From Phallusia mammillata (lineage: Eukaryota), in assembly GCA_965637545.1 (NCBI GenBank), contig OZ281498.1, positions 4,526,001-4,590,000 on the forward strand: a DNA stretch of 64,000 nt. The letters are read 5' to 3'. Position 1 is the first letter of the stretch; each line of letters opens with the position of its first letter. Below the pieces are notes generated by a model, which did not search any database, was not told the origin of the DNA, and was given only the letters and a program-made list of their open reading frames with translations. Positions 307 through 62,904 of this stretch are shown here, in pieces. Position numbers and translations under genes: made by a program.

Positions 307-1119
307 CTTTGTTTATTGCCTCCACGATGTTGGGACGAACAAGACAAACATGCTCTTCGCAATTCAGCTGGTAATAACCGTTGATCACAGATTCGCACGT
401 GCTTTCAAATAAAAAACAAACAAGAATATTTCTGTGCAATTTGTAAAGTTTAAAAACTATTTTATTAGGGGATTTTGTAATGAACTTATTTCAACGTTTA
501 CATACCAGCGATTGCAGTTAACTTTTGTGACGTCGCCAGCTTTAAACGTTTTACCGTTAAAGAAGCATTCACCTGAAAAAATACCGTTACATTTCCACAT
601 ATATGATCTTTATCTTATGACTTGCGATTTACCTGTGTCCAAATGGCTAGTAGTAGTGGTAGTAGTAGAAACAAGACTAGTTACTTCTGCTGTTATAAGG
701 TCTATTGGGGTTGCTGCGGTCGTTATTTTCAAAGTTGGAAGTAAGCAGTAGCTTACATAGTCTGGGCAGCAATCTGAATCAACGTTCCTCTTGCAAAAAC
801 TATCACAGTAACATGTGGTTCCAAAGATCCTCACTGAACAGCTATCGTTTCGCCCCAGACAACACGGCAATTGCCTTCCTGTTCGAGGGAGTAATCTGCT
901 GGAGCAGAACTCCTCGGAACGACGAAATCTGAGCTTTGTATAACTGGCTGTCATTACGTTATGATTTGAAGCCCTTCTTTGATGCAGCAAGTGTAACCAG
1001 CGAACATGTCTTACGGGTTGTTTCTTAACGTTAATGCCGATCCTCTCTGGTGGTAACCCAACAACCAATACGACAAAGCAGCACAAAATCCAGCATGAAA
1101 TCAAAGTCCTCCACGTCAT
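307..1119 (-). CDS. TINAGL1: Tubulointerstitial nephritis antigen-like (TINAGL1/TINAG family) protein, 5' three coding exons; gene continues off the left edge
   Basis: Exons 1119-633, 572-506, 401-307 with GT-AG ends and matching phases. Signal peptide MTWRTLISCWILCCFVVLVVG; somatomedin-B-like CCLGRNDSCSVRIFGTTCYCDSFCKRNVDSDCCPDYVSYC; then ECFFNGKTFKAGDVTKVNCNRCTCE and CEEHVCLVRPNIVEAINKG, matching the TINAG/TINAGL1 N-terminal pattern as I recall it (CYCDxFC...DCCPD; CLVxPxxIxAINxG). Confidence 0.85.
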
Positions 1120-14097: not shown

Positions 14098-14538
14098 ATG
14101 TCTTGGGATAAATACTGCAGTGACACATGTGAGTCATTGAAAATTGCTAAACTTGCTATATTCGGCATATGTGAAAAAACCCAAGCATGCACATTGTGGG
14201 GAAAATTTCCAGAAGATTTTGGTTTTGCTCCGGATTACTTACAGAAGGCCGTTAAAAGCATAGAAAATCATGATTATACTCAATTTCAATGCAATGGAGT
14301 ATATGAACCAAATGGAAATAAATACATATATGTTAGGGATGTTCCTGCAGCCTGTGGTGATGCAATAGTTGCCAAAAAGTCAAAGGATTGTGGTGAAACA
14401 AGGGATCACATAGTAATTTTGGACAGTCGAAACTTCGGTGCTGTTGCTGTCTTTCCGAGTCATGGTCAGCAAGCTGGTGATGATGTTGCAGTACTCAATC
14501 AGGTGGTTGAAAGTTGCAAAAAACATGCTGGCTTGTAA
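14098..14538 (+). CDS. Divergent profilin-like protein, single coding exon, 146 aa
   Basis: Starts MSWDKY (profilin MSWxxY), with AIFG, LWG, NGNKYIYVRD, IVAKK and a C-terminal helix ending KKHAGL. Size and motif order fit the profilin fold. CAC-A-ATG start context; candidate acceptor at 14042-14043. Confidence 0.7.
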   Translation: MSWDKYCSDTCESLKIAKLAIFGICEKTQACTLWGKFPEDFGFAPDYLQKAVKSIENHDYTQFQCNGVYEPNGNKYIYVRDVPAACGDAIVAKKSKDCGETRDHIVILDSRNFGAVAVFPSHGQQAGDDVAVLNQVVESCKKHAGL

Positions 14539-25038: not shown

Positions 25039-28000
25039 ATGCTACGAGCAAGACTTTACGATGGATTAACATTGTCGAGATGGAGAGTGTTCGTCTTCTG
25101 CATCGTCATTCTCCTCTCGCTTCTCGTTGGCTTTAGTTCTGCCCAGGAAAATTTAGATGCAAGGCAACTTACGCCTGATTTTCGTGGCACAAGAGGTAAG
25201 TGTAAATATGTGTTAAGTTATGTTGCAAAAAAAAAATGAACCGTGTTAATATTACTGTACTTCATTATTGGCTCTCTGTTTCACAATCAAACACGTCGGC
25301 ATCTCAAACACATCTGTGTTTCGTTTGATTTGGCACACAAACACTTGTTTGAATTACATAATCGGGAACAAGTCGGCAAATCACACATTGAATTGAATCC
25401 TTAAAACAACAAATCCGCGTCGGGCTGCGATGTTTTCCTGCCAACGTGGATTCGTCAACCGGCATTCCAACATGCCTGCCACTTAGTGACGTCGTAATAC
25501 GATATCCTCAACCGCTGCCTATAATACGATCTTGAAAGCAACACTTCTGTAATCTCCGCTCTGTGGGGACAGATCTTTACTATATTTATGAGCGGTGGTG
25601 GCCGGGGTTAGGGTTTCACATAGGAACTCTCCAGACCACGTTCTGTTGCCCCAGTGCTGGCATTACGTCAGTTCGATTAGTTAACGCTCGCGCGAGCCTT
25701 TGGTTGCGATTTCCACAGTCTTGTTGTGTCCAAATAAGTTTTGTCCGGCCCCGTTGATCGCACATTGACAAAGGAAGGGTCGTTTATCCCGAAACTTTCT
25801 CGCACGCTCCCGTTTCATCTCGCTTTGTTCGGTCAACCCTTGATGTTTTTACATGTCGGTCTTCAATTGCCAGTGCGCAATCCGACAACGGGAGCGTTTG
25901 TGGTGAAAGCACAACTGAAGCGTTTTGGGGCAGACGATCACTAGAAAAATTCCCGCCCACCTAAACAACCCGAACAGCGCGCAGTTGCTTTAATCTGATG
26001 CGATTCACAACATGCTTGGTGGATTTACAACTTGTGCTACGAATGCAAAGATATGTGACACCGAATGTGACAGGGTGGAAAACATATAAGCTGTACATCC
26101 AATTCTAGAAATCAAGCATAGGTATAAACGTTTTGTAGCATCGTACAAAAATTTGGTATTAAAAATAGTCAACCAATTTGCACTCCCTGCCCAAACGTAC
26201 ATAAATCCGGTTTCCATCGGTTTTTGTTGTTGTTGAATCAATGTGCATTAATATGTGTAGAAAACGTTCGGTAATTTTAATAAAAGCTCGAATAAGACGA
26301 GTAACACCTTAGCCAGGCATTCTCATTTGATGTATTATGAGGTGTTGTCGCTTCCTGCGCACATAAAGGGGCCCCGGATTACAAATGAAAACATCTGTTC
26401 GGTTAATCTGGTTATTTATAACGAGACGGCATGTGAACCGAAAATCTACTCGAAAGTCGACTTTCATGTGGTCATGGTAACTGATTGTGTATGGGGGGCG
26501 CTGGAGGGGAGCAAAGTCGCAGAAATAATACCGACTCACCCGAGCATCTGCAAGCCGAACCTAATTCCGATGCCTTACAATCACAACTGGGCGATTGCCT
26601 TTATGGGGTCGACTTTTCAATGCTTTGGGGAGCCGAACCGGATCGTCACGTCATTGATTGTCCTTTTGAACTTTGAAGTCAAGTGCGTCGATAACGACAT
26701 TTAGATGGTCGATTGTGACGCCAAATGGGCCTCATCAGATCAAGACAGTGACTAAATGATCGCGTCATTCGGGTAGACATTTCCAATCGTAGCGGGGCTG
26801 ATAAAACTTGTCAAATGTTTCACGACGAGTCTCTGATTGCCACTAGACGGTGCCGATTGCGCGGGCAAAGGGCTTGGGAAAAAATTGCCGACATATCTTG
26901 CGTTTGAAGCGACAAAATTGTCCGGCTCGCGTTACGGATAATCGCTGCCACGAAACAATGATCGGTAAGGCGAGAGGCTTTGTAGGAGGTTGTTTGATCT
27001 CAAACCGCCAGAAGCCATATATTTCACATTGACACGAAGCCATGCCGTAATCATTTAAATCTTTACCGCGATAATTTGTTACACCATATGCAAATACGTA
27101 TTTATCCAAACGCATAGAAATTCTACTGTAAACTGTTTTTAAAGCTAAACATAGCTATCGCGGTAACGTGTATCCAAACCTATCTGTGTGGATACATTGT
27201 GGTCGCAACCGCTCGACCTGCGTGGTAAGGAATGCCCAGCAACTCGCCACAAGAAAACAAATCGTATGACGTTGGTACACAAATCTGACCCGACTTCAAA
27301 ACACCGTCTGAAGCGGAGACAACACAATCACGCCAATAGGTGCCATCTTGCATTACCTCAACTTTCCCACCCCCTGGTTTCCTAGCTCGAAGACTTAATT
27401 GTCGCAAACTTAACATGTCGTGGCAACAAGAGTGGTAAGAGGCTAGGTTAAGTCAACAAAAGGCTTAGGTCGTGTTGCCACAAGCAGATTCAATGTTGCA
27501 ACACTCTCCGTAAACCCCGATGTCACGGCGGGCATCCGGTCGTAGTTTGCTTAGTGATAAAATGCGCAACAAGGTACACATTCAGCGCATCAGTCAAAAT
27601 TTCAAAAAAAGAACATAATCTCACCACTTTGGTAATCCTGAATTTACTCAACCCAAAATCAAAGGCCCCGCGTCATTAACCGCGTGCAATTGCTAGGATG
27701 GCGATTATGCCTAACGGCCACAAATAGCTTTGCAACTACACGCAGCAGTTTGATCCGATCTTGTGCGGCCAGAATTTGTTCATCTGATAAGAGTCTGATC
27801 AAACGGGTCGACTCGTTGGCAAGCGGAATATATGCCAGGGCAATTTTCGAATTTCGGCGCCGGGAAAGATTACCCCGCAAGAGGTGACCTTAAGTAAACA
27901 TTGCTATCGGCCCCTCGCTTGAACAGAAATTTTCCCAATTGAAAGCATGGTTCAACTCATAGGATAAGAGTTGATTTTACCAATACAGCGGATAGTGTTT

Positions 28001-31000: not shown

Positions 31001-34000
31001 GTGCACGCACTGTGTTCAAAGATAAACCAATCTCCTGACATATACGGCGCGGGGGGCAGGTGGCCTGGATATTAAATGCGACAAATTAAAGGCTGTTGAC
31101 TTTGCACGGAAATCCTAGCAGACGTGCCATCCTTACGTGTGGAAGACTTTCACGCGGGACGGTCTACTTCTCCGACCAACTCCCCAAGTCGCTTTCCCAT
31201 TCTGCGGGCTATGTTGGAAGAGAACGGGGGCCGAGGAAAGGGGTGCGGGTAGTCTGGGGCTGTTTCCTTCCTGTCTTGGAATAGGATTTGATATCTTCAC
31301 CCATCGCCACATTAACAAAGGGGCCGTTGACACACGACCGACTCGATTGATGCAAAACCTTTAATGAGGAAGCGCTAAGGCCCAGGGGACCCTCAAAAGC
31401 CTCGCAGGGGACATGAAGGGCACACCAGAGGCGGGGAAATTCGGTGCAACAGCAAATTATTTTACGATCAGCATTCCGCCGGAAAATTATTACGATATCT
31501 TTCGATTGCTTTGAACGTTGCGAGACATTTAAAGGATTTACGAGAATTTTACTCGAAACAAATTAGCAACATTTAGCTCTCGAGTGCTGGAGTCCTATGG
31601 CGTTGAGCGGCGAAATAATAACACGGCAGGTGGCAGTTTAAGACAAGATTACGAGCAATAATCCCGTATAATAGGAGGCAATCAACCGGCGTTGGCCAGA
31701 CAAGCACTCACGGCCGACAAGGATGTTCTCCCATTCAATGTATGTCATAACAGTGCGTTGCCTTTTTGGAAACCTCCAATTAGATTTGGAGACTACAACA
31801 CAAAGCGTCGAAAGCATGTTGTTGCGGGTGCCCCGGGATCGGCACCAATTAGCTCCATTGTACGGCCAATCCTTTATGCAAGGCCGGCAAATTAAATTGC
31901 GGAAATCAGTCGTTTGAAATCATGGCCTTCCCAAAAAGCATTATCTTTATTTATACAAAGGGGGAAATAGTGTAGTTTTAGTCAAAGTGTATGTGAAATA
32001 ACCAGAGTTGTTTTCAGTTAGTGCCGCAACAGGACCATATGTTTTTGTGAAGTATACCATGGTTTCGTGACAGCTATTAAACGATCAGACGCTTATAAAT
32101 AATGTATACAGGTATGAATAACATAGAAGAGTAGCCGTGCGTAAAGCCCTTTCAATTGGCAAGTTGACATTGGCCAAGTAATGTGTGCTTTGTTATTCGT
32201 ATAGAATAAGATGAGGTCGCGGCGGAGTGTTGGAATGTGGCTTAATGAATACATATCGTTTGATGTCCGTGTTTCCAAAGTTACAGCGCCGACCATGGGT
32301 CGAAAGACGTAGGTGTTGGCGGAATCATTATGCAGGTGCGCCGGCGAACTTTTTTGCGTTTGGTGCTCAATGACGGCGGTTATGGGTAAGTGATTACACA
32401 AAAGCGTGGGTACGGGATACTAATACATCTGCGCTCGAACGCCAGCGCTGCAGATAAATCTGGGTAAACCACAATGTTTGCGAAGATAAACAGATCACCC
32501 GTTAAAACAGGTGCTATAACTACAGTTGAGTAGCCGCGCGAAGGATGCGTTAATCTCACATTACACACTGTCAGAAGATGTGGGATTTGAAATGGCGTTT
32601 CTCAGTAGACGGTTTGATAGTTCACAGTGGTTGAAATTCGTGCAAACATCGGTGCACCGCAAGACTATGGAGTAAGTCATTGATAGGACAACGCCGGCGT
32701 CGACTCATGACACTATCACAGAGAAGTTTACGTGACAAACGATATATACACAAGGTGCGCCTACAACTTCTGTATACACCTATGGCATGTGATTCCAAAC
32801 CGACGCAAAGTCAACAAAGTACAGGTTTTCTCCAAAAAATGCGTGGTCCGGCCCAATCCGTTTTTTGGCGTCGCGACATCAATCGAATCAGGATTATGTG
32901 CGACGCGCATACTACAGCGAAGAGTCCGTTTCTTTTATCGGTGAAACGCCTCCTTACTTGTCGAAAATATTGTTACACTGTTAATATCGAGTGACACTTG
33001 AAGCTCACTTCACATGTTAGAGTGTTGGCGAACTTTTAGCTCGAGCACAGACGGGAGCTGGACAGCGATAATAGGCCAGCTGCCAATCTGGAGTGCATCG
33101 TCTCTAGGCCAGGCTGTAGTTGCGATTTTTCCAACGTTTTCCCAGGAATTTAGCCCACAAAAACGCAAATATATGAAAAAATAGACAGAAAAGGGTAAAA
33201 TTTTTGTGAGTGACAAATCCCAATGACCCTGTGTATAAAAAAGTATATGAGATAGACCATAAGACGTCAGTATTTATTTTCAACTTTGAGGCAGAGTAAA
33301 GCGCTTTGTCACATGTGCTTATATCTGAATTGTTGCGGGCACGAGCAACTGCAGAGTGGAAGTGATATTTTGACCGTACATACAATCACTTGGCTTCGAC
33401 CGACTACTTATCGTGTCGCATTACCGCAACAATACTCTGGTCTTTTCACTGCGTTACAAGAGATCTTGTGTTGCACGACTCGTGTCAACTACATCTGGAA
33501 AGTGCGAGTCACGGTCAAAGGCTTTGTGTCCCACGCTAAATTGCCCTTAATGCAAGCGAGGGGCCACAGTTGACGTACCGCGAATGGGTAAACGGGAACC
33601 TATTGAAGACGCCGCCATCATGAGAGTTTCAGATATTTAAGCGATTCAAGTGTTTGCAAAGATAAAAACTGACGATAATTTTCCCCTACCATCTTTGTTT
33701 GTGTAATTGTGTACATTTAGTTAATTTAGTCCAAGCGCCAAACCGTGTTGCAAACACCTCGTAATAACCGGTTTCTGCTGCGTATATATAGACTGGCGCT
33801 AAAGGTGTGCCCGATAATACAAACCCAATACACGCACGTTTCGTAAAGTCAGGACGTAAAATTTCATAGCGACACACTTTCACAACGCCTACTGTGGCGC
33901 ATAGGTGTACTGAAAACAGCTGATCGGCCTTATCCGCATGGCCTTAATACTACGACAGTTTAAGGAAGGCGACATCATCCCCCGCACAAATCCAATATGG

Positions 34001-37000
34001 ATCAAGGCGCTGCAGCCATCAGCGCTGTTGGGCTTCACGGTCAGTGGTCGCATAAGGCGTGATGGGTAGATCAGGAAGCGTCAGGCTGGAAATGGTAAAG
34101 TTGAGCGACAGGAATTACGAACCAGATCACACAGCAGGCAAATGTAATTATTTTCCGTAAGTAGTGACAGTTTTTTTTGGATCCCGCGCTTTCCGTTCAG
34201 TGATAGACAGTGGGGGCGGGAAAGCGTATTACGCTAGTCTGTTCCTAAAACAGAGTTGTCAAAGATACAGCTGTGCCTACACACTTTTATGGCAAAGTTT
34301 AATAACAGCGCAGTATTGCGGGCTAGCAGGTCCCGAAGTTTGATTTAGAGTTCAGCCGGAAAAGCTGCAGTATTTTTCCGCGGACGACAAGCAGATTGTG
34401 CCAATGTCGCATCGCCGTCAAAAACACTTCGATAAACGGGAATATCGGTTCGAGCTAAGTAGCGCATAAGCGATTTGTTGCGGTCGTATATTTGAAGTCT
34501 AGACAAATACAATGTAATAATGGTTTCTGTGGCGTATAAATTTCGATATGGGTCGCGACTTCATTGATCTGTGGGTGCAGAAATATCAGCCCTGCATGAA
34601 GTGCGCAGCGCTGCACATTGTTTTGTGGTAATCGGCGCTTTGTCGCGGATAAGGACCGTTAAACCGCGATGATGCGTTCGGCGCGTCTTAGATTTGCGAG
34701 TAAAGTGATAATTTCATGGAAACATGACCTCCAGACCCGTGACCACAAGGAAAACAGCACTGGCGCTCAGCGTGTGGCTTATTGGCGAAGCAAAAGCCCC
34801 TACACAAATAACGACGCGCCGCTGTGAATCATAATTTCTCTCATGCTGGCTGTCAGTTTCGATAATGCGACAGGCGCCGGCGAAATCTAATAAGCACAAA
34901 ATAACTATCTTGTTAACAAAAGACCAACTTCGTGTTGCTGTGATTTTGTGTATCAACCCTGTAGTAATTGCTGTACGCGGTTTTTAAATATGCAAGGGTC
35001 CATACAGTATTCTGCGTTCTGCAGTGTATAATTTCAACCCATTGGTATTTGGTATGATTAGTCGAGTTTTAAACTATAACTGGTGTTTCGGTTGAGAACA
35101 TGTTGCGATGTTCAGCAACATTTTCGAACGAAATCTATTGTTGGGCGTTTCCGTTCGGGCGACGTGTTGTCTGGCGCATCGTTTTCATATGCGCCATCTT
35201 TCTGTTGATCTTGGCCAGAGTTGTCTTTTCATACTGATTGAAATGGAAACTATGTGCTTTGGATACTAATCCGAATCTAATTCTTAGAAAACAGCACACT
35301 CCAAACAGCTTGGTTTTCTTCACAAAGTTTCTGCTTAGGACCGATTACGCCCTATACCCGGAAAAGTTAGAGTTTTGCGCTTTTCTCACGCTAAAATTGC
35401 GGTTTGTCAAGTGTTGACAAGTCGACTTTGTGGCACATTAGTCGTCAAGCGAGCCGAATATTCGAGAAACCCTTTTTTCGAAATGAGGTCAAGATAGTTG
35501 TTGTTGTATGTGGGTTCAGTGGCTTAACCTGGGTTTATTTGTAATCTGAACATAGTTCAAAACTGACCTAGAAATCATTATACACACTCTGCCAGGTGTA
35601 GGTTTTAGTCAAAAGTGGGAAATGCTGATGTAAATGTAGTTGTTGGTGGGCGAAAATCATGCGGTGCGATGAACGTTTCCAATGTCGTCCCCCGCGAACA
35701 ACAGACGACTTGACCAAGAGACAATCTAAACTGAGGAAACGGACACTTGGGTCGCGTACTGTGCGACACCTTTCACAACATGTTGGCGATGATGGGCCAA
35801 CTCAAAGAAACGACTCCGCGTTTCCTTTTATGTCGGAAGCGATCTACCAACGCCTACAAACGGCGAGCGACAAAGGACTCGACTCTACGCCTGGACTTGA
35901 ATTTAGGGTGCACTTGCAAGATGAAAGTGTTCCTTTGATTAGATACATTCACTCAAAACTGACATGCTCTGTAAGACACGCAAAGAATAATTGTGGCACA
36001 CAATTAAATAAACGTACGATATGTTTTCACGAGAACAATTCCAAAGGACACGACAGACAAGTGCTCCCCACATTCTGTGTACCAAGAACAGAACATAGCA
36101 ACTTGAATGAAATACGTCTTAGGGTGAAGTTAAAACAACAACGTAAATCGGGCGTTGGTAATTGCCACAAAGCCCTTGGACTAATTGTCATGTTATTTCT
36201 ACCGATGTTTCACTTCGCGGAAGCCTCTCATCTTTCCTATGGTCGAAGGTTGCGCAGGTGGCACCGGTTACCTCGTTATACCCCAATGCCACATGACTTG
36301 GCGCAGCCGGTTGTAACACCACCTGAAGGAGTTACACTTTCGAATAAAAGTAAGTCTCCCTGCACGCATGCAGAACGCCCGATTTTCTAATAATGTTATC
36401 ACTGATGATAAAGCAGCGCCACAATCTGACATTTGACAAGCTTTAGCAAGTTCGCAAGCATGGCCGTTTTCCAACACTTATCGTTCCTTGCGACCACCAT
36501 GAGAAGTATTAGGTGCGATTATGCGAAAAACCCAAACAAACTGTCAATAGGTGGTCATAAGCAAAACCGCCTGTATTGCTCTTACTTGCGGGAGGATGTT
36601 TTCCTCGCGGTGTTAAAACCCAGCGACCCGAAAAAAACACAAACACTGATTGACTCGGGAATGCGCCTAATGGTTTTTTGGGCCAGGGGGAAACTAAATG
36701 TATGTTTTGCGAATATTATGTTCGCGACTTTGGACGTGATTTCCACAGAAAACCAATGGTTTCCTTGCTTGCATGTCGGGAAAGCTAAACACAATAATTG
36801 ACACTGTTCACATTTTCCAATGCTGTCTGCCACTGTTCCACGACAGGTAGGCCTTTATTTAAAGGTCAACCACCACACAAAGCATCCATTGTCGAGATCA
36901 AACACAAATCAACAAAATCTACATTTGCTGTTACGACACGACACCCGCATATTAAAACACAAAATTGCTCTCTTTTTACAAGAATTGTGACAAAGTTTAT

Positions 37001-40000
37001 AGCGCAGGGCTGTGATATAACACCTTAAAACTATTTTTAGGGCTTTATCCATCCGTCGTAAATCTGGCAAGCCAGGCTACAATAAGTTCTAACGCAACGT
37101 GCGGGTTGCGAGGTTCAGAGAAATATTGCAAATTGGTGGAACACGTGGATCGACGGACCTTGCGAAGTCAGCAATGTTCGGTAAGAGGCTCACCCAGGCC
37201 TTGAGAATCTTGACCTTAGCTACACTTTTCCTTTGCAGTGTTTGCTGCAGTTACCGATTTAAAAGAGTAGTGTTGATATTCTTTGACAATTTTTGTTATG
37301 CGTTTGAAGATTGTTTTAAAAACATACGGTGAATTTTTGACCTCCTTTCGCTAAAAATGTATCTTTTTAGCTTGCGAGTAAAAATGTATGTAATAATTTT
37401 GGCTTTTCTCGTTCGCAGATGTGCGATGCAAGCAGTCGAGTGAACCAGCATCCCATCGAGTACGCAATCGACGGATACGGGGGACGATGGTGGCAGAGTC
37501 CCACTATCGACCAAGGTTACCAAAACCATTACGTCACCATAACGTTGGACTTGAAGCAAGTAAGTGCGTGCGGCGACTTCCTTTCGTCGACCTGTCAATA
37601 CGGACTATAGGAATTGTTTGCTGTAGTCTTGTTCCCACAGGCTAATCCCGCCAGGGGAAATGAGCGCATTTTTGCCTTTCGTGCCGTGCGAAATAACGCG
37701 TTACTTTCAGGGGCGACGCGATAAGCCTATCTGTTGACATTGCAACGTATTTTTGCTGCTGTGGCCGAGCGAGGGGCGGGTAAAGCGCACAATGGCTACC
37801 GCGACACGCTAAGGCACAAGCGCCCGTCGGAAATACCGACTTTTCAAACCCAGTGGGGTCGCGTATAACAATGGACCAACAGTCGTTTGAAGGTGGGGCA
37901 CTTGAGCGGGGTAATTCAATCGCGGGGAAAGTGTCTATGTTTGGGACTTTGCAAACGTTTGAACTCACGCCTCGCAGGCCCGACCCTAACGATCAGTTTT
38001 TTTCGGCAAATATCACATCGAGGGTGGAGTCGGGCATATTTTTCGTGTTCTTAATCATTCCGTGAGAGCCATTGTTGCAAAAGTCGAAGCCTCGAATCGC
38101 AAAGGTTAACTGGGAAATCGGTACGTGTTTCCCACGGTGTGGTTAGTTCTAACAAAATAGTATTACAATTTACGCAAATGTTTTAACCTGTAAGTTAGTT
38201 AACAAATGCAAAATATCATGATCATTAAACATGTTCATCACAGCGCTTATGTAAAGGTGTGTAAAACCAAAAGAAATCACATGACGTAATGGCAAACGAA
38301 AGTGATTACATGGCAACAAGTTACGACCCAAGGGTCAAAATCCTTACGGTTAGGCCGTGTCGGGTTGCGGGTTGGTGGTGTGTTGTTGTGGCAACCTCGC
38401 GATTCTTTACAAGTGACAATATGGGAGAGGTAACAAGCTACTATTGCGAGCTTCGCTACTGCATGATTGCCTGCATCACAAATGCCCTTTACTGAAAGCG
38501 TCTGAAGGCAATTGCTTCACACGTCAGACTATTCCCATGGCAATACTGATTAGGATAAGAATTTAACGCGTACAGTAGGCTCACTGGTTAGTAAAAACGG
38601 GGCAACAATATTTTGTTAGGGAAGCGTTTAAGGCTGACAAGTTTACGAAGCAACCGCAGATTTTTACCAGCAGGACAAACTTTTGGGGGCGTTTTGCCCA
38701 TTGAATTGAGTGTTTTAGATAATCCATGGACATTTATTCCATTAAAACTAGATTACAGCGATGCTTAATTAAAATTGATGGTTTATGGCACTATCGCGTT
38801 TACCGATACAGGACAAAATGTAAAAAAACGTGGCGCTTTTATTTAAATGGACCGTAATCATGGCTGACTTCGGCGCGCTAGGTAAACAAACATAGCAATC
38901 AAAGAATTCAGCGATTCGGTCTTAGTACGGAAATTGGTTTATTACGCAATGGCACAAGGTCGAAAGTTTGAAAAATTTACATTCCGGCAAATCTACAAAA
39001 CGAGCAGTTTTAACAGATCAAAGAATTAAACGCGTATGGGGCAAATTTTGAATAGGCGTGTCCTTATCACGTCATAAAAACAACTTCGATCAAAGGGTTT
39101 TAGCTCAAAATGGTAAATTGTTTTGATGGAGATTTGCCGAAAATTGCCCATATAGCAAGCCCAATTTTCACTGTAATCCGCCGAAGATTGGTTGCTTATA
39201 GCTCTGTGCTTTCGAGGCTTTAAAGTTGCGAAATAAGCCATTAGCAACGACCGACTGAGGCGTCCAATGCACAGTAATTGCAGAGATGACTATTCGCGCG
39301 ATGTTGTGGGTAAGGTTCTAAACTCGGCAAAGGACATCCGGTTGCTCGGAACGCAGCATCCATATTTAGCAAGACTCTGCGTCTAGTTAGCTCGAGTCAT
39401 AGCTTTCCTCTTTAACGCAAAGCTGTTTATCCCATCAACGTCTGAACAAACTCAATTTTCAATTACTACGCCTTCCGAGCCCGTAATGTCCTCGGTGTTC
39501 TCACGCACGCTTCTTCACGGCATTGCTCTTGCCATTTGCACGCGCTGAGATATACGTGTGCCTCACGCGAGGTTTGTTTTATGAACTCAATTAGAGATTG
39601 CAGTTCGTCGGATCGCTGGCGTTTCTTTGTCGATTTGGTTGCTGAAATGTAACGATTTGAGTTATTTTTTGCCTCGAAATAAGCTGTGGCAATATCCCGT
39701 TCGACCCGCTTAAATACTTTTAAGGTTTGCGCCGATTTGTCAACTTGCTGCCTCATGCGTCATCCACGCGCTTGCGGGTGACAAACGCACGCGAACATTT
39801 GGTCTCTTGGGACAAAAACAACACGCAGGATCAAAACCCTGCACCAAATATAACGTAGGGCGCTTTTGTGCCACCTAGGCGAAATAACAGCACCACAAAA
39901 CTTCGCTGCAGCGAATTTTATAAGCGCAATGCGCTTGTGGTCTTTCGCATCAAACACAGCAAAGTGGTCTCCGCCTTCAGTGTAACCCAACCCTTGATTG

Positions 40001-43000
40001 CAGCCACAAATCGGGGTTTGATTTCACCGTACGATTGCGCGCCGTTGCTTTTGATCGCATGTACCGTCGCGGTGCCAACGAAGGGCGGGGGCCGTTTACT
40101 TTCCACGACGAGTTTACACAACAATCACTCGCGCGCTTACTGTTTAGGCACGACATCACACAACAAGGTGCATTACGTCATTCCGATTTGAAGGCCCGTT
40201 TCGGTTTTCCCGTGAATAGACGAAAAATGTTTCCAGGCTCTTGTCTAAAACAGGCACGGTCCTGGCAGGATCAGAAAGCAGTCGCCAAATTTCCTGTCTG
40301 CGTTCGCCGTAAACAACACTCTGTATAGTTGGACATCATCGCCATTGCTACTTTTTCGTGCTGAATCATTCTTTCTGCTCAATTAAGGTTCACTTGGTTT
40401 AGGAGCCATATAACAACAAATGCGCGGTTCATATATCTCCAGATCGGGCGTGGTTTCGTTGTCTGGGCAAAAACATATATATTATGGTTCAGGTGACAGC
40501 CCGACACCATTAAACTCATAATCTTGCCATCGCAAAACTAAACTTGGTCGAGTATCCGTTCTACACGCGATAGAATCTGCGCCAAATCGCCGCTAATCTA
40601 TTGAATCCCCGCCCTTTGATAACGACCGCGAGACTGTCGTTAGTCTGGTATAGGTCAAGTCACGTGATCGGGCAACAGCTGCGTCAGTTCGGGGTCTGAC
40701 ATTTGGTGACACGGCGAACAATTTCCCTACCTGCAGTGACAAGAATATGTGGCCTCGCAACCGCAGGAAATAAGAAATAATTTTCCTCTCTTCGAAGGTC
40801 TTTCAAGTCGCCTATGTGATCGTGAAAGCGGCCAACGCCCCGCGCCCAGGCAACTGGATTCTCGAAAAATCAATCGACGGAATCAAATGGTTTCCGTGGC
40901 AATATTTTGCTACCTCCGATAGGTAATTATCCACGCATTTTTCCAACGTGACTGACCGGTTTGCTTCGGCGTTGGACGCGCGCCATTGCCAAATTAAGTC
41001 ACACACGGCGTGTTGTGACATTTTGCAAGAAATCTTTTTTGTTCACAGAGAATGCGTGCAAGTTTATGGAACAAGAGCAGCGGGACGAGGCCCGCCGAGA
41101 TATACCTCCGACACAGAGGTCATATGTACCTCGTACTTCTCGAAAATTATCCCGCTGCAAAATGGCGAGGTACGGCAAATCTTACAGTGACCACTGATTA
41201 GCGGGTAATACGACTAACACATGCTTTAGATTCATGTATCACTAATCAACGGTCGACCAAGTGCAGAAAACCCATCCAAAGACCTCATGGAGTTTACGTC
41301 AGCTCGTCACATTCGTTTAAGATTGCAAAAAATTCGAACGCTGTATGGTGACCTAATGGCAATCAGCCAGTTTTCGGCACACTACCAAGACCCGTCCGTC
41401 ACAAGAAGAGTAAGTTGTTTCTACATTTAGCACGACCACCAACGTAAAGTCTTTAAATAGATTTTATATCAAGGTTTAACCTTAAATCAGTTCCAATGGA
41501 CAAAGGCAGTTCAGTTGTCGCCTAATAATTATGTGAAGTTTAACTTTTAAACGTCATCTATAGCACAGAAACATGTATTTTAATGACGGAAATGTTATAG
41601 GTGGCGTAACATAACAGGGCGTACAGCGTAAAATGGACCTCACATTAATAGTCATGCCCGTGCAACCCATAAATGGTAGTCATGGAGCCATGATGTGGTG
41701 GCAGCGAAATCAAATGGCCTTCGCGTAATTTTCCCAGCAACCAGCGTTGCGATGTTTTTGCCATTTCAAGGGACGATTCGCTTCTAAACAGGTCGGCGAG
41801 TAGAAAGTGACTTGATACAATTTGTCTGGCCGCGATTCGAGGCGCGCATTTCGTTTAAGGAGAGCACGCTGATTTGTTGACGTTTGGGATTGGGTTTTAT
41901 GGACTCATGTCCCGTGTCCACGCCTATTTGATTGACTAAACGCGTAAAGGCGAGAAGGCGTCAACTGATCTGGCGGTCCCCTTTTTGTTCCTTAGATGCG
42001 AGACAGTTGGGTGAGTTGAAAAGGTTAAATGGCAGTGAAAGGTAACCACATTGCGACGTTAACGAAATCGCTGTAAGGTTACAAAAACGAAATTTGACGA
42101 TTTGTTTTAACGCCATTGTGGAAAGAAAAAAAGGCGTTTAGTTTTTTTCTGGTTCCTGAACCATTAATTTCATCCGTAAACTTTCGTTTGACACATAAAA
42201 AATAAATTAACTTTAAATTTAATACCCTAATCTCCAGCAGTTTTTAATATTGTACAATGATAAACATTTGCCGACGACCAGTAATCTCTTCATATCAGAG
42301 ACGATATCAAACTGTGAAGCGTCCGTACTGAAAGACCGCCGCAATTTTGTGTGCCAGATTTATCGTTATTGTTGCCAGCATACAACAGGATTTGTGAGAT
42401 GTTTACTTAGAGCCGCAACGTATTGCACAAAGTGGTCTTGTGAGGAGGATCGCATTTCGTCCACAATTCAACATCACTCGGGCATTTTTTTCATGAGTCA
42501 GACGCAGGAAAATTGGTACTCGAGAAACGAGCAAAGTGGCAGACGTTCGGCTGTTGTTGGCCGAATATTTGGATGTCTTTTCATCTCAATCCGCTCTACC
42601 TCAGAGGGGAAGGGCTGTGTAATGGGAAAGGGCGACGTTGCGGCTCGAACAGTGACATTTGCGTAACGGTTCAAGAGAAGTTGTCAGTTTCACCAGTTTA
42701 AAAACATTATCCAAAGAGTCAGGAAGCAGAAAGCTAAAATTGTGAACGAGTAGAGTGAAAGGATTAATATAGTACCGAACTGCTGTAGATTTTGTAGAAT
42801 AAGTTTTTTTTTCTTTTCAAAGAAAGCAGATTTTTTTAGTTTGCCACGAACTAAAACACATTTTTTTCTGTATTTGTTTAGATTGTGCTGCAAAAAAAGA
42901 GCTTTCAGATTTGCTGCAAAAACGAGCAATTTTGCATGTAGTCTATCAATGAAAAATATTGTGCAAGGGTCAAGAATTTGTTTTGAACTTTTTGAGAAAT

Positions 43001-46000: not shown

Positions 46001-49000
46001 TGATCAATTAAAACTGACTCTCATCAACAACAAAATTCGTTACATAGGCCAACGTTGTGGGTGAAGGTTGTTCCCAATGCAAGACAGGATACTTTAACAT
46101 GCAACGCGACAACCCTAGCGGCTGCGAGAGGTGTTACTGCAGTGGCGTCGCGCTGAATTGCGCCTCGGCCGATCTAAGATGGTAAGCCGATATTCGATTA
46201 TTGACGGAAGCGGTTAACCTTAACACACACTTGGCGTGCATAATCTCCAGGTCTACAATACACACAAACCACAACTGGGAAGTGCGAGACAGACGAAACC
46301 GACGTCGAGTGACGCCGCAGTTCGATTACGATCTCAACGAGCCTTACGTGGAACACGGACAAACAGCACGTGACCTAGGCACAGCCATGTACTACTGGGC
46401 AGCGCCCGTACAATATTTAGGTAGGAGTTATAATTAGTTATTGGGTCAAATGTCAAAGTGCTTTTGGCTTAGATATTTTTCTGAACCCTGTTGTGTAATT
46501 GGTATCGAAGTCATTTGTGGGTTTGTTTTCAGGAGAGCGCCTGTCATCGTATGGTGGAACATTGCGCTACACTGTGTCCTATGATATTCTGCAAGGTTCA
46601 CAAGCGCTGCCAATTCAGGATGCCGACGTTATAATGGAGGTAAAAAAACTAACAACGACATTTTTATTTCGCTATGTATTTTGGTACATACAAACTATGC
46701 TCTTTTGGCAAATACTGTTTGTGATGAGTAAGTACTTTTTCCATGCAGGGAAACGGAAGATCCTTAACATACAACTACATGGGAAGTTTGGTTTATCCAC
46801 AAGAAGAAACCGAAGTTTTAATCAAACTGGAAGCCAATAAGGATAGGGATGTATCTGGTTGGGTTGATTCCAATTCCCTGCTACCAGCGAGCAAAGAGGA
46901 AATCATGACAGTTCTTCAACACGTGACCCGCCTGTACATCAGAGCAGTTTACAGCAGAAATGCTGGGGCAGTTTACAGGTGCGCAAATATTTTTGTTCAT
47001 GCCGCGAGGTTGCTGATCAACGTTTGACTTTTAAACGTTTGTGTGTTTGATTTGTTGTTTAATATAACTTATGCGTAGAATACGGGATGTGTACATGCAA
47101 GCAGCAACGGAAAATGGAGAAGGAGCAACAGCACATTCAGTAGAGAAATGTCGTTGCCCTCCGGGCTACACCGGATTCTCCTGTGAGAACTGCGCAGGGG
47201 GTTACTGGAGGTGACGTGATGTGCAATGAAAGCAAACCACAAGTTTTACCACATACCATAAAACGCTTGTTCGTTGCAGGAGCGGAAGGATGTGTCTACC
47301 CTGTCAGTGTAACGGACATTCAAATTCTTGTAACCCACTAAATGGTGCCTGTGAGGTATATGAGGCAAAACTTGTGAATTTCTTCTTAGTCGCAGAACAA
47401 CACGTAAACATTAGATATTGTTGACAGAATTGCCAACATAACACGATGGGAATGCACTGCGAACGATGTAAACCTGGATTCTACGGTGATTCCACAACAG
47501 GAACTCGAGATGATTGTCAAATGTATGTAAACATTGTAAGTGCCAGGAAATACTGATGTGTATTAAGCATTTCTTACATTAATTAGGTGTTCCTGTCCAC
47601 TACCGATCGCCAGCAACAACTTCAGTCCGCTGTGCTATTTGGATCGCACCACATCAGAAATGGTTTGCCTAAAATGCCCGACAGGTTACGCCGGAAAGAG
47701 ATGCGAAACGTGAGCATATCTTTGTGTTTCTCTTTTATACGAAAGTGTTTGCATATAGACTCAAGGCTAGTATTGTCGCTTCACGTGCATACAAAGTAAA
47801 ATATGTCGGACACAAGATTAATTTCATGTGAAAAGGAAAACTCAACTAAAAGGACAAAGTTGTAACTGTGGTTTAACCTTCAAACCGCTTTCAAGCAATT
47901 AGAACCCGTGATGTGGCAAGAAAGGTCGTAGTTTTATCTCCGTTAAACATGTTTTAGCAGTTAAATATACACGATGCTCCACAATTTAGGAACCAATGGC
48001 ACAAAATTACCTTGTTTTATGAGGGTAAATCGTTTGATTTATTTAGTCCTTAATGTTTGCAGATGCGAGCAAGGTTACTTCGGCGACCCGACAACACCTG
48101 GTGGATCATGTCAACTCTGCGAATGCAATGGAAACTCCCAATCGTGTGACTCACTCACTGGGGTGTGCACTTATTGCAGAGGACACACATCAGGAAAACA
48201 TTGCGAAGTCTGTGAACCAGGTAGCTTTATCACTTTGCCGACATCACATCAACAGACCGCATTAATGAAACCTGTTCAATGTGTCCTGTAGCATACTACG
48301 GAGACGCGATCGAGCGAAAAAACTGCGGACCGTGTGAATGCAACGCGGTGGGGTCGGTGAGCCGTCAGTGCCATCTTGTCACGGGTCAGTGCTCGTGCAG
48401 GCCTGGTGTTTACGGGAGGAAGTGTGACGCGTGTGAGGTAAACTGATCTCGCGCCTCGCCATCGGTGGGTGCTAAAACGGTGCGACGACAGAACTGTAAC
48501 GAGTGTTGTTGTTTTTGCCCGCAGAGCGGCCATTACCTCAGCGCAGAGGAACGCATGTGCGTGGCGTGTGAATGCGATGCCACTGGGAGTCTTTCAGAGC
48601 AGTGCGGTGCCGACGGATCTTGCATTTGCCGTTCGGGTGTGGAGGGACGACGCTGCAATTCGTGTGCGCGTGGATACTTTGCATTCAGCGAACTTGGCTG
48701 CATAGGTAATCTAGCATGTAGGTAATGTCGTCTTCGAACGATTTTCATCGCATTGATGTTACTTACCCGATATTTTTTGTGCTTGTCTAGAATGTAACTG
48801 CCAGCACACCAATGGAAACTGCGACACACAAACAGGAGAGTGCATCTGTCCTACAAACACACACGGCTCTGAATGTAGCCAGTGTGTGGAAAACGCATTT
48901 GGGATTGACAGTGTGAATGGGTGCGAGGTATTACAGAATTTTCAACACGCTTATAAGTTTGACTTATACGCCCCCCAGACGATTCCGTAACATGACTAAA

Positions 49001-52000
49001 CCTATTTTGTTGTCCGCAGCTGTGTAACTGCAGTGATGTTGGTTCTCTGTTTACAAACACGTGCGATAACTCAACCGGCCAATGTACATGCAAACCCGAA
49101 TACGACGGCAGACAATGTAACACTTGCAAGTAAGTAGTCAACAGATATCGAATATTAGTAGCTTCCTATACAGCTAACCACGAGTCACTATTTTAGGCGT
49201 GGATTCTACGGTTATCCCAACTGCAGACCGTGCAACTGCAACAAAATAGGCACCGCTGCAGACGAATGTGATGAGTCTAGAAATGGTTCGTGTAATTGCC
49301 AAAACGATGGTCAATGTGTATGCAAGGTAACCTTAGTGTGGTGTACGGCACACAGACTGTAGAATATGGCATATCATTGTTTATGTTTTAAGGCAAACGT
49401 GGTTGGAAAACAATGTGATCAATGCGGCGAAGGATACTTCGGTCTGAGTGAAAGCAACCCACTAGGATGCAGCGAGTGCTTCTGTTTCGGAGCAGCAGAC
49501 CTCTGCATCGCTGCTCAGGGATACTCCTGGGGTCCTCCGGTAAGATCAGCAACAAGCATTTGTGAAATTATTGCTCATACAAATAATTCAGTCTCAAATG
49601 AATCGTAAACACTACCGATATATGATTTTTGCAATATTCGATCAAAAAAGCCACCATGCTGACCATGTTTCTGCTTACTTACCGACAGATCGTCTTACAA
49701 GACCCATTTGAGATTGTGGTGAGGATACGGTGTGTTCTCACATACAAATTAACTCGCGCGCAATGCAATTTAAGCTAACCCGGGACTGTGCAATAATTAG
49801 AAAATAGTGAACCTAAAAGCTAAACCGACTGCGCATTTCTGTTTTTACTAACAGCTTCCACAAGATCATCACGCAGCTATACTTTTCTATAAATGCAGCG
49901 GTTGTTATTGCTCATTTAATAGCGGGCGTTTATTTTGTGCTCAGTGCTGTAGTAGCGCCTAAAACACAGCTTGTTGCGCTTTCCGTGCTCTAATGAATGA
50001 ATACATTTGGAAACAATTCGTTAGCCGTTACTAAAATTGGCTGGTGTTTAAATTATCTCCATCAAAAGATCCTGTGATTTCACAGTGATCATTGGCAATA
50101 TTGCATGAAAATTTTAGTCCCTAATCTGCGCACCTTTGTTCTGCACCGTTCAAAGTTGGGGTGATAACGTGTTCGTTTGCTTAGATTGCGCTTAATTCGG
50201 CGCCAGTAGAGGTTTTGAACCCCTCTGGTATGGCGAACAGAATTGAGGGTCTCATCGCTACCAGAGATGCTGAGGTACGTGATGCAGATGTTGTGATACG
50301 GGATATACACAGTCAACCATACTACTGGCGTCTTCCGGAACAGTTTAACGGCGACAAGGTTCGTACAGCAAAACGACACGCTAAACCGGTGTAAAAAACT
50401 CAAATTTTTGTTTTCCGCAGTTGCTTTCCTACGGAGGCAAACTGAGGTATACAATATACCATGTCTCCCAAGTATCGTTTGAAGATGAAGAAATCGTAAA
50501 GCCAAGTGTAGTTTTAAAAGGCGGTCGGGGAAGCAAAATAACCATTCAGTATCAGTTGGACAGCCCTCAAACCGGCCAGAGCAGAGATTATGTCGTTTCA
50601 ATGCGTGAGGTAGGTTTGTAGAACATTGGATGGAAGACTGCTTTTTATAGTACCATTCACAATACTTTATCACAGCTTGGGTGGACACACCTAGACACCA
50701 GCAGAAGTGTGACTCGAGCCGAATTTGCAACAATCCTTAGTGACATCGAGTTTTTCCTGATCAAGGCAACATACGGCCGCTTGATGGGGCAGTCGAGGTT
50801 GGTATCGCATGCGAAAACAACTTTTACAAACAGGAGGCAGGGCCGGCAGGGTCTAGGGCGCTCAAACAGACATCAAAAAACAATTGGGCATTGCTTCGAA
50901 CCCCGCATAAAAAATCTTTACAAACAGTAAAAACACGGACGATCAACTTGTGTTTCTTTTTTGTAGGCTGAGCAACGTTTTTCTGGATATCGCCCAAACC
51001 ATGATACGAGGACGTGGCGATGCAGGCTCCAATTATCCACCTGCAACAAGTATTGAACAATGCTTTTGCTACCCAGGATATACAGGTTCCTCTTGTCAGG
51101 TTGGTAAACTTTATGACCTTAGTTCATTAGATTTCGATTCAATTGAACAATTTCTTGTTGCAGAACTGTGACAGCGGATATATGAGAATCCAACAGGGTT
51201 CAAACTATGGACGGTGTGAAGCTTGCAACTGCAACAACCGAAGTAGCACTTGCGACATAATGACAGGGGTCTGTTTGGTAAGAAAACAATTAGGCATTAA
51301 ATTTCGTGTGTTTTTATTTAAACCTTGGACTTAACAGAACTGCCAGGACAAGTTCATTGGTGTCCAGTGTGAAATGTGCTCGCCGGGATACTACCTGTCA
51401 GGTAACGAATGCAGGAAATGTGCGTGCCCTGGACCAGATCCTTTCCAAAATTTCAGCCCCAATTGCCACCCGGATGGAGCGGACGGAATCGCCGATTATA
51501 CGTGCGATGCATGTAAAACAGGATACGAAGGAAAACATTGTGAACGGTATGTAAATTTGAAATCAAATCGACAGTATCGAATATGACAACATGCTGATAC
51601 ATTTGCGGCACTTGACACGTTACACCTTGATATTAAATACCACCAAACAAGTGTGAATTGTACCGTATGTTTGGTAAAGGTGCTCGGATGGCTACTACGG
51701 GGATCCTACCCACCCTGGAGGTTTCTGTGCCAAGTGCGGATGCAACGTCGCAGGTTCCCTGGATGGTGTTTGCGACAAGGTCACAGGGCAATGCCGATGC
51801 GATGAAGGCATCTCGGGTAGAATTTGTGACCAATGTATGCCACGACATATTATCTCCCACTCCGGGTGCCAAGGTAGGACTGCATTGCCGAATTCTTGAT
51901 GTTGCTTCTAAGAACCTCCAAGCTAATCCATGGTTTTTTTGTAGAATGCAATGATGGTTGTTCCAGCAAACTTCTCGACGATATTGAAATTTTGACCTAC

Positions 52001-62804: not shown

Positions 62805-62904
62805 GTTTAGACAACCAAAATCAGTATCGTAGAGACGATAATTTGTTTGTCTTTACCAGAATCAATCGGAAGAAAGTGTGTTGGAATTAGCCTAAGTCAG
62901 AAAA

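What the first reader, a model, noticed from the sequence alone, without database searches (positions are those of the whole stretch)
35659..36349. 230-aa alternative N-terminus suggesting a membrane-tethered, furin-releasable laminin alpha
Seen: the longest ORF on the track has a good start context (AATC-ATG) and ~170 hydrophilic residues ending in a basic run ([11 protein letters not shown]). A 15-aa hydrophobic stretch (36172-36216) follows, then A-E-A (36217-36225), RRLRR (36244-36258), a Pro-rich spacer and a perfect phase-1 GTAAGT donor giving [15 protein letters not shown]. Known: laminins are secreted with short cleaved signals; a basic segment before an internal hydrophobic stretch is typical type II signal-anchor topology; RXRR is a furin site. 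Inference: an isoform anchoring the LN polymerisation domain to the membrane with a cytoplasmic tail, or released by signal peptidase or furin. A short form from ATG 36190 is an alternative.
Basis: partly seen in the sequence, partly recalled or inferred. Interest (0 to 1): 0.85.

Follow-up and report, generated by a model that had tools for sequence, protein, structure and literature searches.

The report
Laminin alpha alternative first exon
The exon is real and is spliced onto an invertebrate-type laminin alpha gene exactly as predicted, so the main open reading frame puts 171 extra, unconserved residues in front of a weak signal sequence; whether this tethers laminin to the membrane is untested and less likely than ordinary signal cleavage.

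Summary
Observation confirmed. Every sequence feature sits at the stated coordinates. Intron-free contigs from four runs of one study carry the predicted joint 36349>37041 (GT..AG). They start at 35598-35602, so the whole 230-codon ORF is in the mRNA.

For a long, translated ORF:
- An in-frame TGA lies 33 nt upstream of ATG 35659.
- The frame stays open in 0 of 20,000 shuffles.
- ATG 36190 lies inside the hydrophobic core and would give a crippled 12-residue signal.

Against an evolved domain:
- No homologue among 1.84 billion representatives, and no Pfam family.
- No codon-position periodicity, and codon usage is close to non-coding.

A textbook signal-peptide first exon (25039-25195, same phase) lies 12 kb upstream. 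The finding is therefore an alternative first exon, "1B".

The hydrophobic core is short and weak (16 residues containing P and H; KD19 1.68 against 2.68 for exon 1A) and has an A-E-A site. RLRR is expected by chance in 9-37% of shuffles.

My reading is an N-terminally extended ER signal that is partly or mostly cleaved, with at most a transient type II tether. A stable, furin-released membrane laminin is possible at about 0.12. Interest is moderate.

The parts
35598..36349 (+). Alternative first exon '1B' of the laminin alpha gene, as seen in RNA contigs. The true 5' end may lie a little upstream.
   Evidence: contigs from 4 runs begin at 35598-35602 and run without a break to 36349, then join 37041.
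35622..35639 (+). Cluster of tiny upstream ORFs in the leader (ATG CTG ATG TAA, then ATG TAG). It includes the in-frame TGA at 35626-35628 that closes the main frame upstream.
35659..36171 (+). 171-codon N-terminal extension. It is basic (20 R, 12 K; net +15), has 7 Cys, no known domain and no homologue.
   Evidence: AF2 single-sequence mean pLDDT is 40.9.
36124..36126 (+). In-frame GTG (V156, context cttaggGTGa). A start here would give a classical 34-residue signal peptide. This near-cognate start is hypothetical.
   Evidence: There is no supporting RNA structure (z = -0.62).
36172..36219 (+). Hydrophobic core A172-A187 ([16 protein letters not shown]), the candidate h-region or signal anchor. 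ATG 36190 (M178) lies inside it.
   Evidence: KD15 2.18; KD19 1.68.
36217..36225 (+). A-E-A, with small residues at -3 and -1. The predicted signal-peptidase site lies between 36225 and 36226 (A189|S190).
   Evidence: Sequence. The (-3,-1) rule is as summarised in PMC8277137.
36244..36258 (+). RRLRR, which contains the minimal furin motif RLRR. It is not statistically distinctive.
   Evidence: 8.6% of shuffled tails and 37% of shuffled whole products carry RX[KR]R.
36350..37040 (+). Intron of 691 nt (GTAAGT...TTTTAG), phase 1.
   Evidence: joint 36349>37041 in 4 of 4 runs.
37041..37180 (+). Exon 2, the first residues of the LN (Laminin_N) domain.
   Evidence: PF00055, profile positions 2-42. 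(aligns from residue 2 of laminin alpha-1 chain 8dmk_A)..
37419..37559 (+). Exon 3, continuing the LN domain. It joins exon 4 at 40798.
   Evidence: joint 37179>37418, cut +1; the loose end after 37561 equals the start of exon 4..
25039..25195 (+). Candidate canonical first exon '1A'. It has a 16-residue n-region, h-region [19 protein letters not shown]|QE, then a GTAAGT donor in phase 1. Spliced to 37041 it would read ...GTRG-LYPS. Its use is not tested.

Best explanation
The stretch 35598-36349 is a genuine alternative first exon (1B) of a laminin alpha gene of the long type, with an LN domain, two L4 domains and LG domains. In the four RNA samples available it is the only first exon assembled onto exon 2.

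The mRNA's first long ORF starts at AUG 35659, which has A at -3 and follows three minimal uORF AUGs. It runs in frame into the LN domain. The default product is therefore a laminin alpha precursor with a 171-residue basic N-terminal extension. The extension is probably disordered and is lineage-specific, possibly young.

Behind the extension sits a signal-peptide-like element: a basic flank, a 16-residue h-region and A-E-A.

Inferred mechanism:
- The h-region works as an internal, N-terminally extended ER signal. The extension stays in the cytosol and the LN domain and everything behind it are translocated.
- The h-region is short and weak and carries a canonical -3/-1 site. Signal peptidase therefore cuts at A189|S190 in a substantial fraction of chains. 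This releases ordinary secreted laminin alpha with about 42 extra N-terminal residues.
- The very long n-region slows or lowers that cleavage, so a transient or partial type II-tethered pool is plausible.

Shown: the exon, the splice junction, the ORF and the motifs. Inferred: the start codon used, the topology and the cleavage.
For: - Junction, and the full ORF inside spliced contigs of 4 runs.
- In run X3 the separate upstream contig (35598-36003, depth 10.6) is not shallower than the downstream ones (6.3 and 7.95). No dominant internal start of transcription is visible.
- In-frame stop 33 nt upstream of the AUG.
- Frame open in 0 of 20,000 shuffles, against 8-17 stops in the other frames.
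- 14 ATGs lie between the 5' end and 36190, against 10.1 expected. This does not look like a leader meant to be scanned through.
- ATG 36190 lies inside the hydrophobic core, so a working signal needs a start upstream of K171.
- Hydrophobic segments this strong are rare in translated non-coding DNA here, at 0.92 per 1000 aa.
- Charge is +5 on the N flank and +3 on the C flank.
- In yeast CPY constructs, longer N-terminal extensions and more hydrophobic h-regions shift a signal from cleaved to anchored. Model anchors with 14 Leu are cleaved and 17 Leu partly (PMC8277137).
- N-terminal extensions convert the secreted proteins NPR and C1QL into membrane forms (bioRxiv 10.1101/2024.02.16.580719).
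Against: - No homologue of the 230-residue product at E<=0.001 in 1.84 billion representatives, none in the word-indexed search, and no Pfam family.
- Protein-language-model recognition is 1423, below the 2300 typical of real families. A profilin control from the same window scores 2688.
- No codon-position periodicity: chi2 6.2, p = 0.41, against 7-27 for laminin coding blocks of similar size.
- Codon score is 0.025 per codon, against 0.229 +/- 0.148 for coding cores and -0.11 to 0.005 for open non-coding stretches.
- One of the two SNPs in the exon is non-synonymous (F139S).
- The three uAUGs end only 20-26 nt before AUG 35659 and may divert ribosomes.
Across a whole genome, one such open leader could arise by chance.
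- Contigs cannot show a transcription start, and all four runs come from one study.
Confidence: 0.55

Rival explanations
1. The long form is a stable type II membrane protein with a 171-residue cytoplasmic tail. The LN domain is held at the cell surface and is released by furin at RRLRR.
For: - The transcript and ORF are real.
- The N flank is more positive than the C flank.
- A very long n-region disfavours signal-peptidase cleavage (PMC8277137).
- N-terminal extensions anchor otherwise secreted NPR and C1QL.
- From my own knowledge: type II matrix or surface proteins shed by furin exist, namely collagens XIII, XVII, XXIII and XXV, ectodysplasin and teneurins. The abstract of PMC2185078 describes Ten-m as type II.
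Against: - The hydrophobic span is only 16 residues, with Pro and His. KD19 is 1.68, just above the classical 1.6 threshold and well below the 2.68 of the cleaved signal in exon 1A.
- A canonical A-x-A site follows directly.
- The furin motif is expected by chance in 8.6% of shuffled tails and sits 7-11 residues from the bilayer.
- There is no conservation to show selection on the tail.
Confidence: 0.12
2. The upstream 170 codons are effectively leader. Translation that matters starts close to the hydrophobic core, at near-cognate GUG 36124, at AUG 36190, or on a shorter transcript from an undetected internal start site. The result is an ordinary short cleaved signal. The open frame is then young or accidental.
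For: - The extension has no coding signature and no homologues.
- A start at GUG 36124 (A at -3) would give a textbook 34-residue signal with a +5 n-region.
- Near-cognate starts control signal versus anchor in NPR and C1QL.
- Contigs cannot exclude minor shorter transcripts.
Against: - Scanning ribosomes would have to pass AUG 35659, which has a good context, and about ten further AUGs.
- There is no AUG depletion.
- An open frame of 177 codons was never reached in 20,000 shuffles.
- AUG 36190 yields a 12-residue signal with no n-region.
- No stable hairpin lies downstream of the GUG (z = -0.62).
- Upstream contig depth is not lower than downstream depth in X3.
Confidence: 0.2
3. Exon 1B transcripts are mostly unproductive or regulatory. 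The leader is laden with uORFs and the signal is awkward, so little laminin is made from them. Secreted laminin alpha would come from mRNAs that start at the canonical exon 1A (25039-25195). In one variant, 35596 is an acceptor (ccAG|GT), either for a spliced leader or for an upstream exon. Joining 1A to it would hit TAA 35631 in frame, making a poison exon.
For: - A canonical signal exon in the same phase lies upstream.
- Three uAUGs sit in the 60-nt leader.
- An AG lies at 35594-95, 2-6 nt before the contig starts.
- The extension has weak coding signatures.
Against: - In all four runs, exon 2 is assembled onto 1B without a break at 37041 and with no loose end pointing to another upstream exon.
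- No contig runs on beyond 35598 into unlike sequence.
- The contig starts differ by a few nt between runs, as with fading coverage at a true 5' end.
Confidence: 0.13

Closest known systems
Laminin alpha-1/alpha-2-type chains (for example mouse or human LAMA1, PDB 8dmk chain A)
   Same: - Exon 2 aligns from residue 2 of the solved alpha-1 LN domain.
- Laminin_N, two Laminin_B domains and C-terminal LG domains are present.
- Candidate exon 1A gives the usual short cleaved signal, with Gly before L-[FY]-P.
   Different: The 1B mRNA places 171 residues in front of the signal-like core and about 42 residues between the predicted cleavage site and the LN domain. It puts Arg in place of Gly at the junction. 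From my own knowledge, known laminin chains are described as secreted through short N-terminal signals. A search for a membrane-anchored laminin found none.
Switching between signal peptide and signal anchor by N-terminal extension (NPR, C1QL; bioRxiv 10.1101/2024.02.16.580719)
   Same: A hydrophobic N-terminal element can act as a cleaved signal or as a type II anchor, depending on how much polypeptide precedes it.
   Different: In NPR and C1QL the extension comes from alternative, often non-AUG, start codons on one mRNA and is short. Here it comes from an alternative first exon or promoter and is 171 residues long. No experiment exists for this protein.
Internal or N-extended cleavable signal sequences (yeast Sps2, CPY N-extension series; PMC8277137)
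   Same: There is a hydrophobic core with a -3/-1 site behind an N-terminal extension. Cleavage efficiency is set by N-length and h-region hydrophobicity.
   Different: The extensions tested there were 9-26 residues, against 171 here, and the species and signal peptidase complex differ.
Furin-shed type II matrix or surface proteins (transmembrane collagens XIII, XVII, XXIII, XXV; ectodysplasin; teneurins)
   Same: The proposed layout is the same: cytoplasmic N-terminus, single span, basic cleavage motif, large extracellular matrix-type ectodomain.
   Different: Those proteins have longer hydrophobic spans and conserved cytoplasmic domains (my own knowledge, not tested here). This one has a 16-residue span, an A-x-A site, an unconserved tail and a motif no better than chance.

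Membership tests
Laminin alpha chain | N-terminal LN (Laminin_N) domain | tested here: met
   PF00055 on exons 2, 3 and 4, profile positions 2-129, E 2.5e-8 to 3.3e-10. Match to laminin alpha-1 chain 8dmk_A at E 5e-12.
Laminin alpha chain | L4 (Laminin_B) domains within the LE rod, and C-terminal LG domains specific to alpha chains | tested here: met
   Laminin_B at 46728-47024 and 50385-50618. Laminin_G at 58885-59250 and 60006-60284. Cys-rich LE repeats can be read.
Classical cleaved N-terminal signal peptide | Short n-region, with the hydrophobic core within about 30 residues of the initiator Met | tested here: not met
   From AUG 35659 the core starts at residue 172, and from AUG 35830 at residue 115. 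AUG 36190 lies inside the core. It would be met only with a hypothetical GUG 36124 start.
Classical cleaved N-terminal signal peptide | h-region of about 7-15 apolar residues, followed by a c-region with small residues at -3 and -1 | tested here: met
   [12 protein letters not shown], then HF-A-E-A|S. SignalP and Phobius were not available.
Type II signal-anchor membrane protein | Hydrophobic span long enough to cross the bilayer (about 18-25 residues) with no usable signal-peptidase site | tested here: not met
   The longest run free of DEKRNQ is 16 residues, KD19 is 1.68, and an A-E-A site follows directly.
Type II signal-anchor membrane protein | More positive charge on the N-terminal (cytosolic) flank | tested here: met
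   +5 on the N flank (157-171) against +3 on the C flank (188-202). The margin is small.
Type II signal-anchor membrane protein | Experimentally membrane-integrated, uncleaved product | not testable with these tools
   Needs microsome or cell assays.
Furin-shed ectodomain proteins | R-X-K/R-R motif that is accessible and is used | tested here: inconclusive
   RLRR is present at residues 197-200. The motif arises in 8.6% of shuffled tails and 37% of shuffled whole products. Its use is not testable here.
Conserved protein-coding exon | Homologues or a purifying-selection signature | tested here: not met
   0 hits and no periodicity. Caveat: a profilin-like ORF from the same window also found nothing in the word-indexed search, so close relatives seem to be missing from the databases.

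The most novel reading that the evidence does not exclude
An animal makes, as its main laminin alpha mRNA in some tissue, a form in which the LN polymerisation domain is held at the cell surface by a type II anchor with a 171-residue basic cytoplasmic tail (which carries an NLS-like KRQSKLRKR). Release would be regulated by signal peptidase or a proprotein convertase. This would be a membrane-tethered laminin, which to my knowledge has not been described.
Probability: 0.13. Interest if true: 0.85.

Novelty: new variant of a known kind. Interest (0 to 1): 0.5.

Why it matters
Laminin alpha LN domains nucleate basement-membrane polymerisation, and all described laminins leave the cell as soluble heterotrimers.

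A promoter-specific first exon could delay or prevent signal cleavage. That would give a cell a way to hold the polymerisation domain at its own surface, or to throttle laminin output in one tissue.

The locus also offers a clean natural test of how far an n-region can be lengthened before a signal peptide becomes an anchor. It may further be an example of a young, unconserved ORF extension fixed on an ancient, essential matrix gene.

If the extension is not translated or is simply cleaved off, the finding reduces to an ordinary alternative promoter.

Tried and rejected
- Homology for the exon 1B product gave nothing: Pfam, word-indexed search, full phmmer over 1.84 billion representatives, ESM Atlas.
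- A single-sequence AlphaFold2 model was uninformative (mean pLDDT 40.9), so I ran no fold search.
- Origin from a repeat, paralogue or transposon: blastn and tblastn of the exon against the window found only itself. Long open stretches between 25.2 and 35.6 kb and in the introns have no Pfam family.
- An RNA element in the exon or leader: Rfam gave only a sub-threshold snoR134 hit on the other strand (24.4 bits against 40). Folding z-scores were -0.62 and +0.76, so no hairpin supports a near-cognate start.
- Naming the organism: the profilin-like ORF gave no word-indexed hits, and the Atlas gave only 'commonest Chordata' for profilin clusters. I do not name the organism.
- Literature on a membrane-anchored laminin or on laminin alternative first exons with N-terminal extensions: nothing relevant.
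- I did not submit spliced proteins as typed letters, so full-length laminin relatives and their N-termini could not be fetched.
Full report
**What is in the sequence**

The + strand carries an ORF at 35659..36390, 243 aa unspliced.
- ATG 35659 in context aaaatcATGc.
- 171 hydrophilic, basic residues (20 R, 12 K; net +15) ending in [11 protein letters not shown].
- The hydrophobic stretch [15 protein letters not shown](A) at 36172-36216(19).
- A-E-A at 36217-36225 and RRLRR at 36244-36258.
- A tail with 6 Pro in 41 residues.
- A GTAAGT donor after 36349 in phase 1.

An in-frame TGA at 35626-35628 closes the frame 33 nt upstream of the ATG. The window contains no N.

**The gene**

Downstream lies a complete long-type laminin alpha gene on the + strand, reaching about 60.6 kb:
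- Laminin_N on exons 2-4.
- Exon 2 aligns from residue 2 of the solved laminin alpha-1 LN domain, 8dmk_A, at E 5e-12.
- Two Laminin_B domains and C-terminal LG domains.
- LE repeats and a coiled coil can be read in the translations.

The LN domain starts at the first residue of exon 2. Whatever exon 1 encodes is therefore signal and linker only.

**RNA evidence**

Four runs of organism A, all from one study, hold 15-16% of the sampled words of 35000-40999. On 34000-39999 each gave contigs covering only 35598-36349, 37041-37180 and 37419-37561. Depth is zero over both introns and over 34000-35597. The contigs carry these joints, both GT..AG:
- 36349>37041.
- 37179>37418, where shifting the cut by one base gives exon boundaries 37180 and 37419.

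The runs are labelled only 'RNA?'. The intron-free, exon-only pattern shows they are RNA.

The contigs begin at 35598, 35602, 35598 and 35600. No loose end points to another upstream exon, either at 35598 or at 37041. The only loose end, after 37561, is the start of exon 4 at 40798.

In run X3 the exon is split into separate contigs. The upstream contig (35598-36003, depth 10.6) is not shallower than the downstream ones (6.3 and 7.95). No dominant internal transcription start is visible, although contig depth is a coarse measure.

**Is the long ORF meaningful?**

For:
- The 177 codons between 35659 and 36190 stay open in 0 of 20,000 dinucleotide-preserving shuffles. The analytic estimate from the local stop frequency is 3e-4. 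The other five frames of the exon carry 8-17 stops.
- The region from the 5' end to 36190 contains 14 ATGs against 10.1 expected (the ATGs are listed). It does not look like a leader evolved to be scanned through.
- ATG 36190 sits inside the hydrophobic core. Starting there gives [12 protein letters not shown], a 12-residue signal with no n-region. Six core residues and the whole basic flank lie upstream.
- Hydrophobic segments of this strength occur only 0.92 times per 1000 aa in translated non-coding DNA of this window. One placed just before a phase-matched donor in a long open frame is unlikely to be chance.

Against:
- There is no Pfam family and no word-indexed homologue.
- There is no hit at E<=0.001 in a full phmmer scan of 1.84 billion representatives.
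- Language-model recognition is 1423, below the 2300 that 91% of real families reach. A profilin-like ORF from the same window scores 2688.
- Codon-position composition shows no periodicity: chi2 6.2, p = 0.41. Laminin coding blocks of similar length give 7-27, and open non-coding stretches give 2-14.
- The codon log-likelihood is 0.025 per codon. It lies between open non-coding stretches (-0.11 to 0.005) and coding cores (0.229 +/- 0.148).
- Of the two SNPs in the exon among the RNA samples, one is F139S and one is synonymous.

Caveats:
- The profilin-like ORF also found nothing in the word-indexed search. Close relatives of this organism seem to be missing from the databases, so the blanks say little about conservation within the genus or family.
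Across a genome, about one accidental open leader of this length is conceivable.

My reading is a young, fast-evolving or disordered extension that is nevertheless translated whenever this mRNA is translated.

**A canonical first exon upstream**

This found exactly one:
- ATG 25039 to 25195|GTAAGT.
- n-region [16 protein letters not shown].
- h-region [16 protein letters not shown] (KD19 2.68).
- SSA|QE cleavage motif.

Spliced to 37041 it would read ...GTRG-LYPS. No recognisable coding sequence lies between it and exon 1B.

Its use is untested, because my only read-laying run did not cover it. It makes the finding an alternative first exon ('1B') rather than the gene's only N-terminus. In the four samples, exon 2 is assembled onto 1B without a graph break, so 1B dominates there.

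**How it most likely works**

Both a cleaved signal and a signal anchor are recognised and inserted in the same way. Whether signal peptidase then cuts depends on two things:
- N-length: extensions of 16-26 residues already shift a hydrophobic CPY signal towards an anchored form.
- h-region hydrophobicity and length: model anchors with 14 Leu are cleaved, 17 Leu partly, and longer Leu stretches remain uncleaved.

These rules come from PMC8277137. N-terminal extensions convert secreted NPR and C1QL into membrane proteoforms (bioRxiv 10.1101/2024.02.16.580719).

Here the two determinants pull in opposite directions:
- The n-region is extreme at 171 residues, which favours an anchor.
- The core is short and weak: 16 residues containing Pro and His, and KD19 1.68, weaker than the cleaved signal of exon 1A.
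- An ideal A-x-A site follows the core. Both features favour cleavage.

Flank charges (+5 on the N side, +3 on the C side) and the size of the N-domain predict that the extension stays in the cytosol.

I therefore commit to an N-extended ER signal with partial to predominant cleavage at A189|S190 and a transient tethered pool, at confidence 0.55.

The RLRR motif adds little. It arises in 8.6% of shuffled tails and 37% of shuffled whole products, and it lies 7-11 residues from the membrane.

**Other rivals**

- Translation effectively starts near the core, at GUG 36124 (A at -3), giving a textbook 34-residue signal, or on an undetected shorter transcript (0.20). No hairpin supports a near-cognate start, and many AUGs stand in the way.
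- The 1B mRNA is largely unproductive or regulatory (0.13). Supporting points are three uAUGs (35622, 35628, 35634) just upstream of the main AUG and an AG at 35594-95 immediately before the contig starts. That AG could be an acceptor for a spliced leader or for an upstream exon. Joining 1A there would meet TAA 35631 in frame. The absence of any loose end at 35598 and the slightly different contig starts argue for a true 5' end, but contigs cannot prove it.

**Comparison with what is known, and novelty**

The gene is an ordinary member of the laminin alpha family. The N-terminal arrangement does not fit a classical signal peptide, because the n-region test fails. It does not fit a classical type II anchor either, because the span length and the absent-cleavage-site tests fail. 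It works most like the N-extended or internal cleavable signals and the NPR/C1QL proteoform switch, but it is produced by an alternative first exon.

I found no paper on a membrane-anchored laminin.

I class it as a new variant of a known kind, with moderate interest (0.5). The transcript-level observation is solid. The protein-level claim is open and can be tested directly.

**Limits**

- There was one read-laying run and one run search.
- All RNA comes from one study, as contigs only.
- No signal or TM predictor was available.
- Spliced proteins could not be submitted by reference, so relatives' N-termini were not examined.

Noticed in passing
window 25039-25195 (+): Textbook signal-peptide first exon: 16-residue n-region, h-region [19 protein letters not shown]|QE, GTAAGT donor in phase 1. 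It matches the acceptor of LN exon 2 at 37041 and is probably the canonical laminin alpha exon 1. Its use was not checked in RNA.
   Followed up: partly
window 57799-57834 (+): Polybasic run [12 protein letters not shown] inside the LG-domain region of the same laminin alpha. From my own knowledge it resembles the convertase cleavage sites in or near LG3 of vertebrate alpha chains. This is not tested.
   Followed up: no
window 35594-35597 (+): ccAG|GT lies 2-6 nt upstream of where all four RNA contigs begin. It could be an acceptor for a spliced leader or an upstream exon rather than a transcription start. The contig data cannot resolve this.
   Followed up: partly
window 14098-14538 (+): Intron-less 146-aa profilin-like ORF (Pfam Profilin E 1.3e-6). 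It has no word-sharing relative in the 5.8-billion-cluster protein collection. Either it is a very divergent profilin or the lineage is poorly sampled.
   Followed up: partly
window 62896-63999 (+), running off the window end: Open frame of more than 368 aa. After a hydrophobic N-terminus it consists of about 18-residue Thr/Glu-rich tandem repeats (...TQETTEQVSTTGIDETTDMTT...). It looks like a mucin-type gene directly downstream of the laminin gene.
   Followed up: no
window 50092-50736 (-): 215-codon open stretch antisense to laminin exons and an intron, with no Pfam family. It shows that long open frames without function occur in this window, at least opposite coding sequence.
   Followed up: partly
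window 613-1353 (-): 247-aa open stretch with a hydrophobic segment and a Cys-rich motif (CYCDSFCKRNVDSDCCPDYVSYC) reminiscent of a somatomedin-B domain. This is from reading only and was not scanned.
   Followed up: no
window 37460 (+): G>T in RNA contigs of two runs changes E to D in the conserved LN motif HPIEYAIDG. This is a segregating non-synonymous variant.
   Followed up: no
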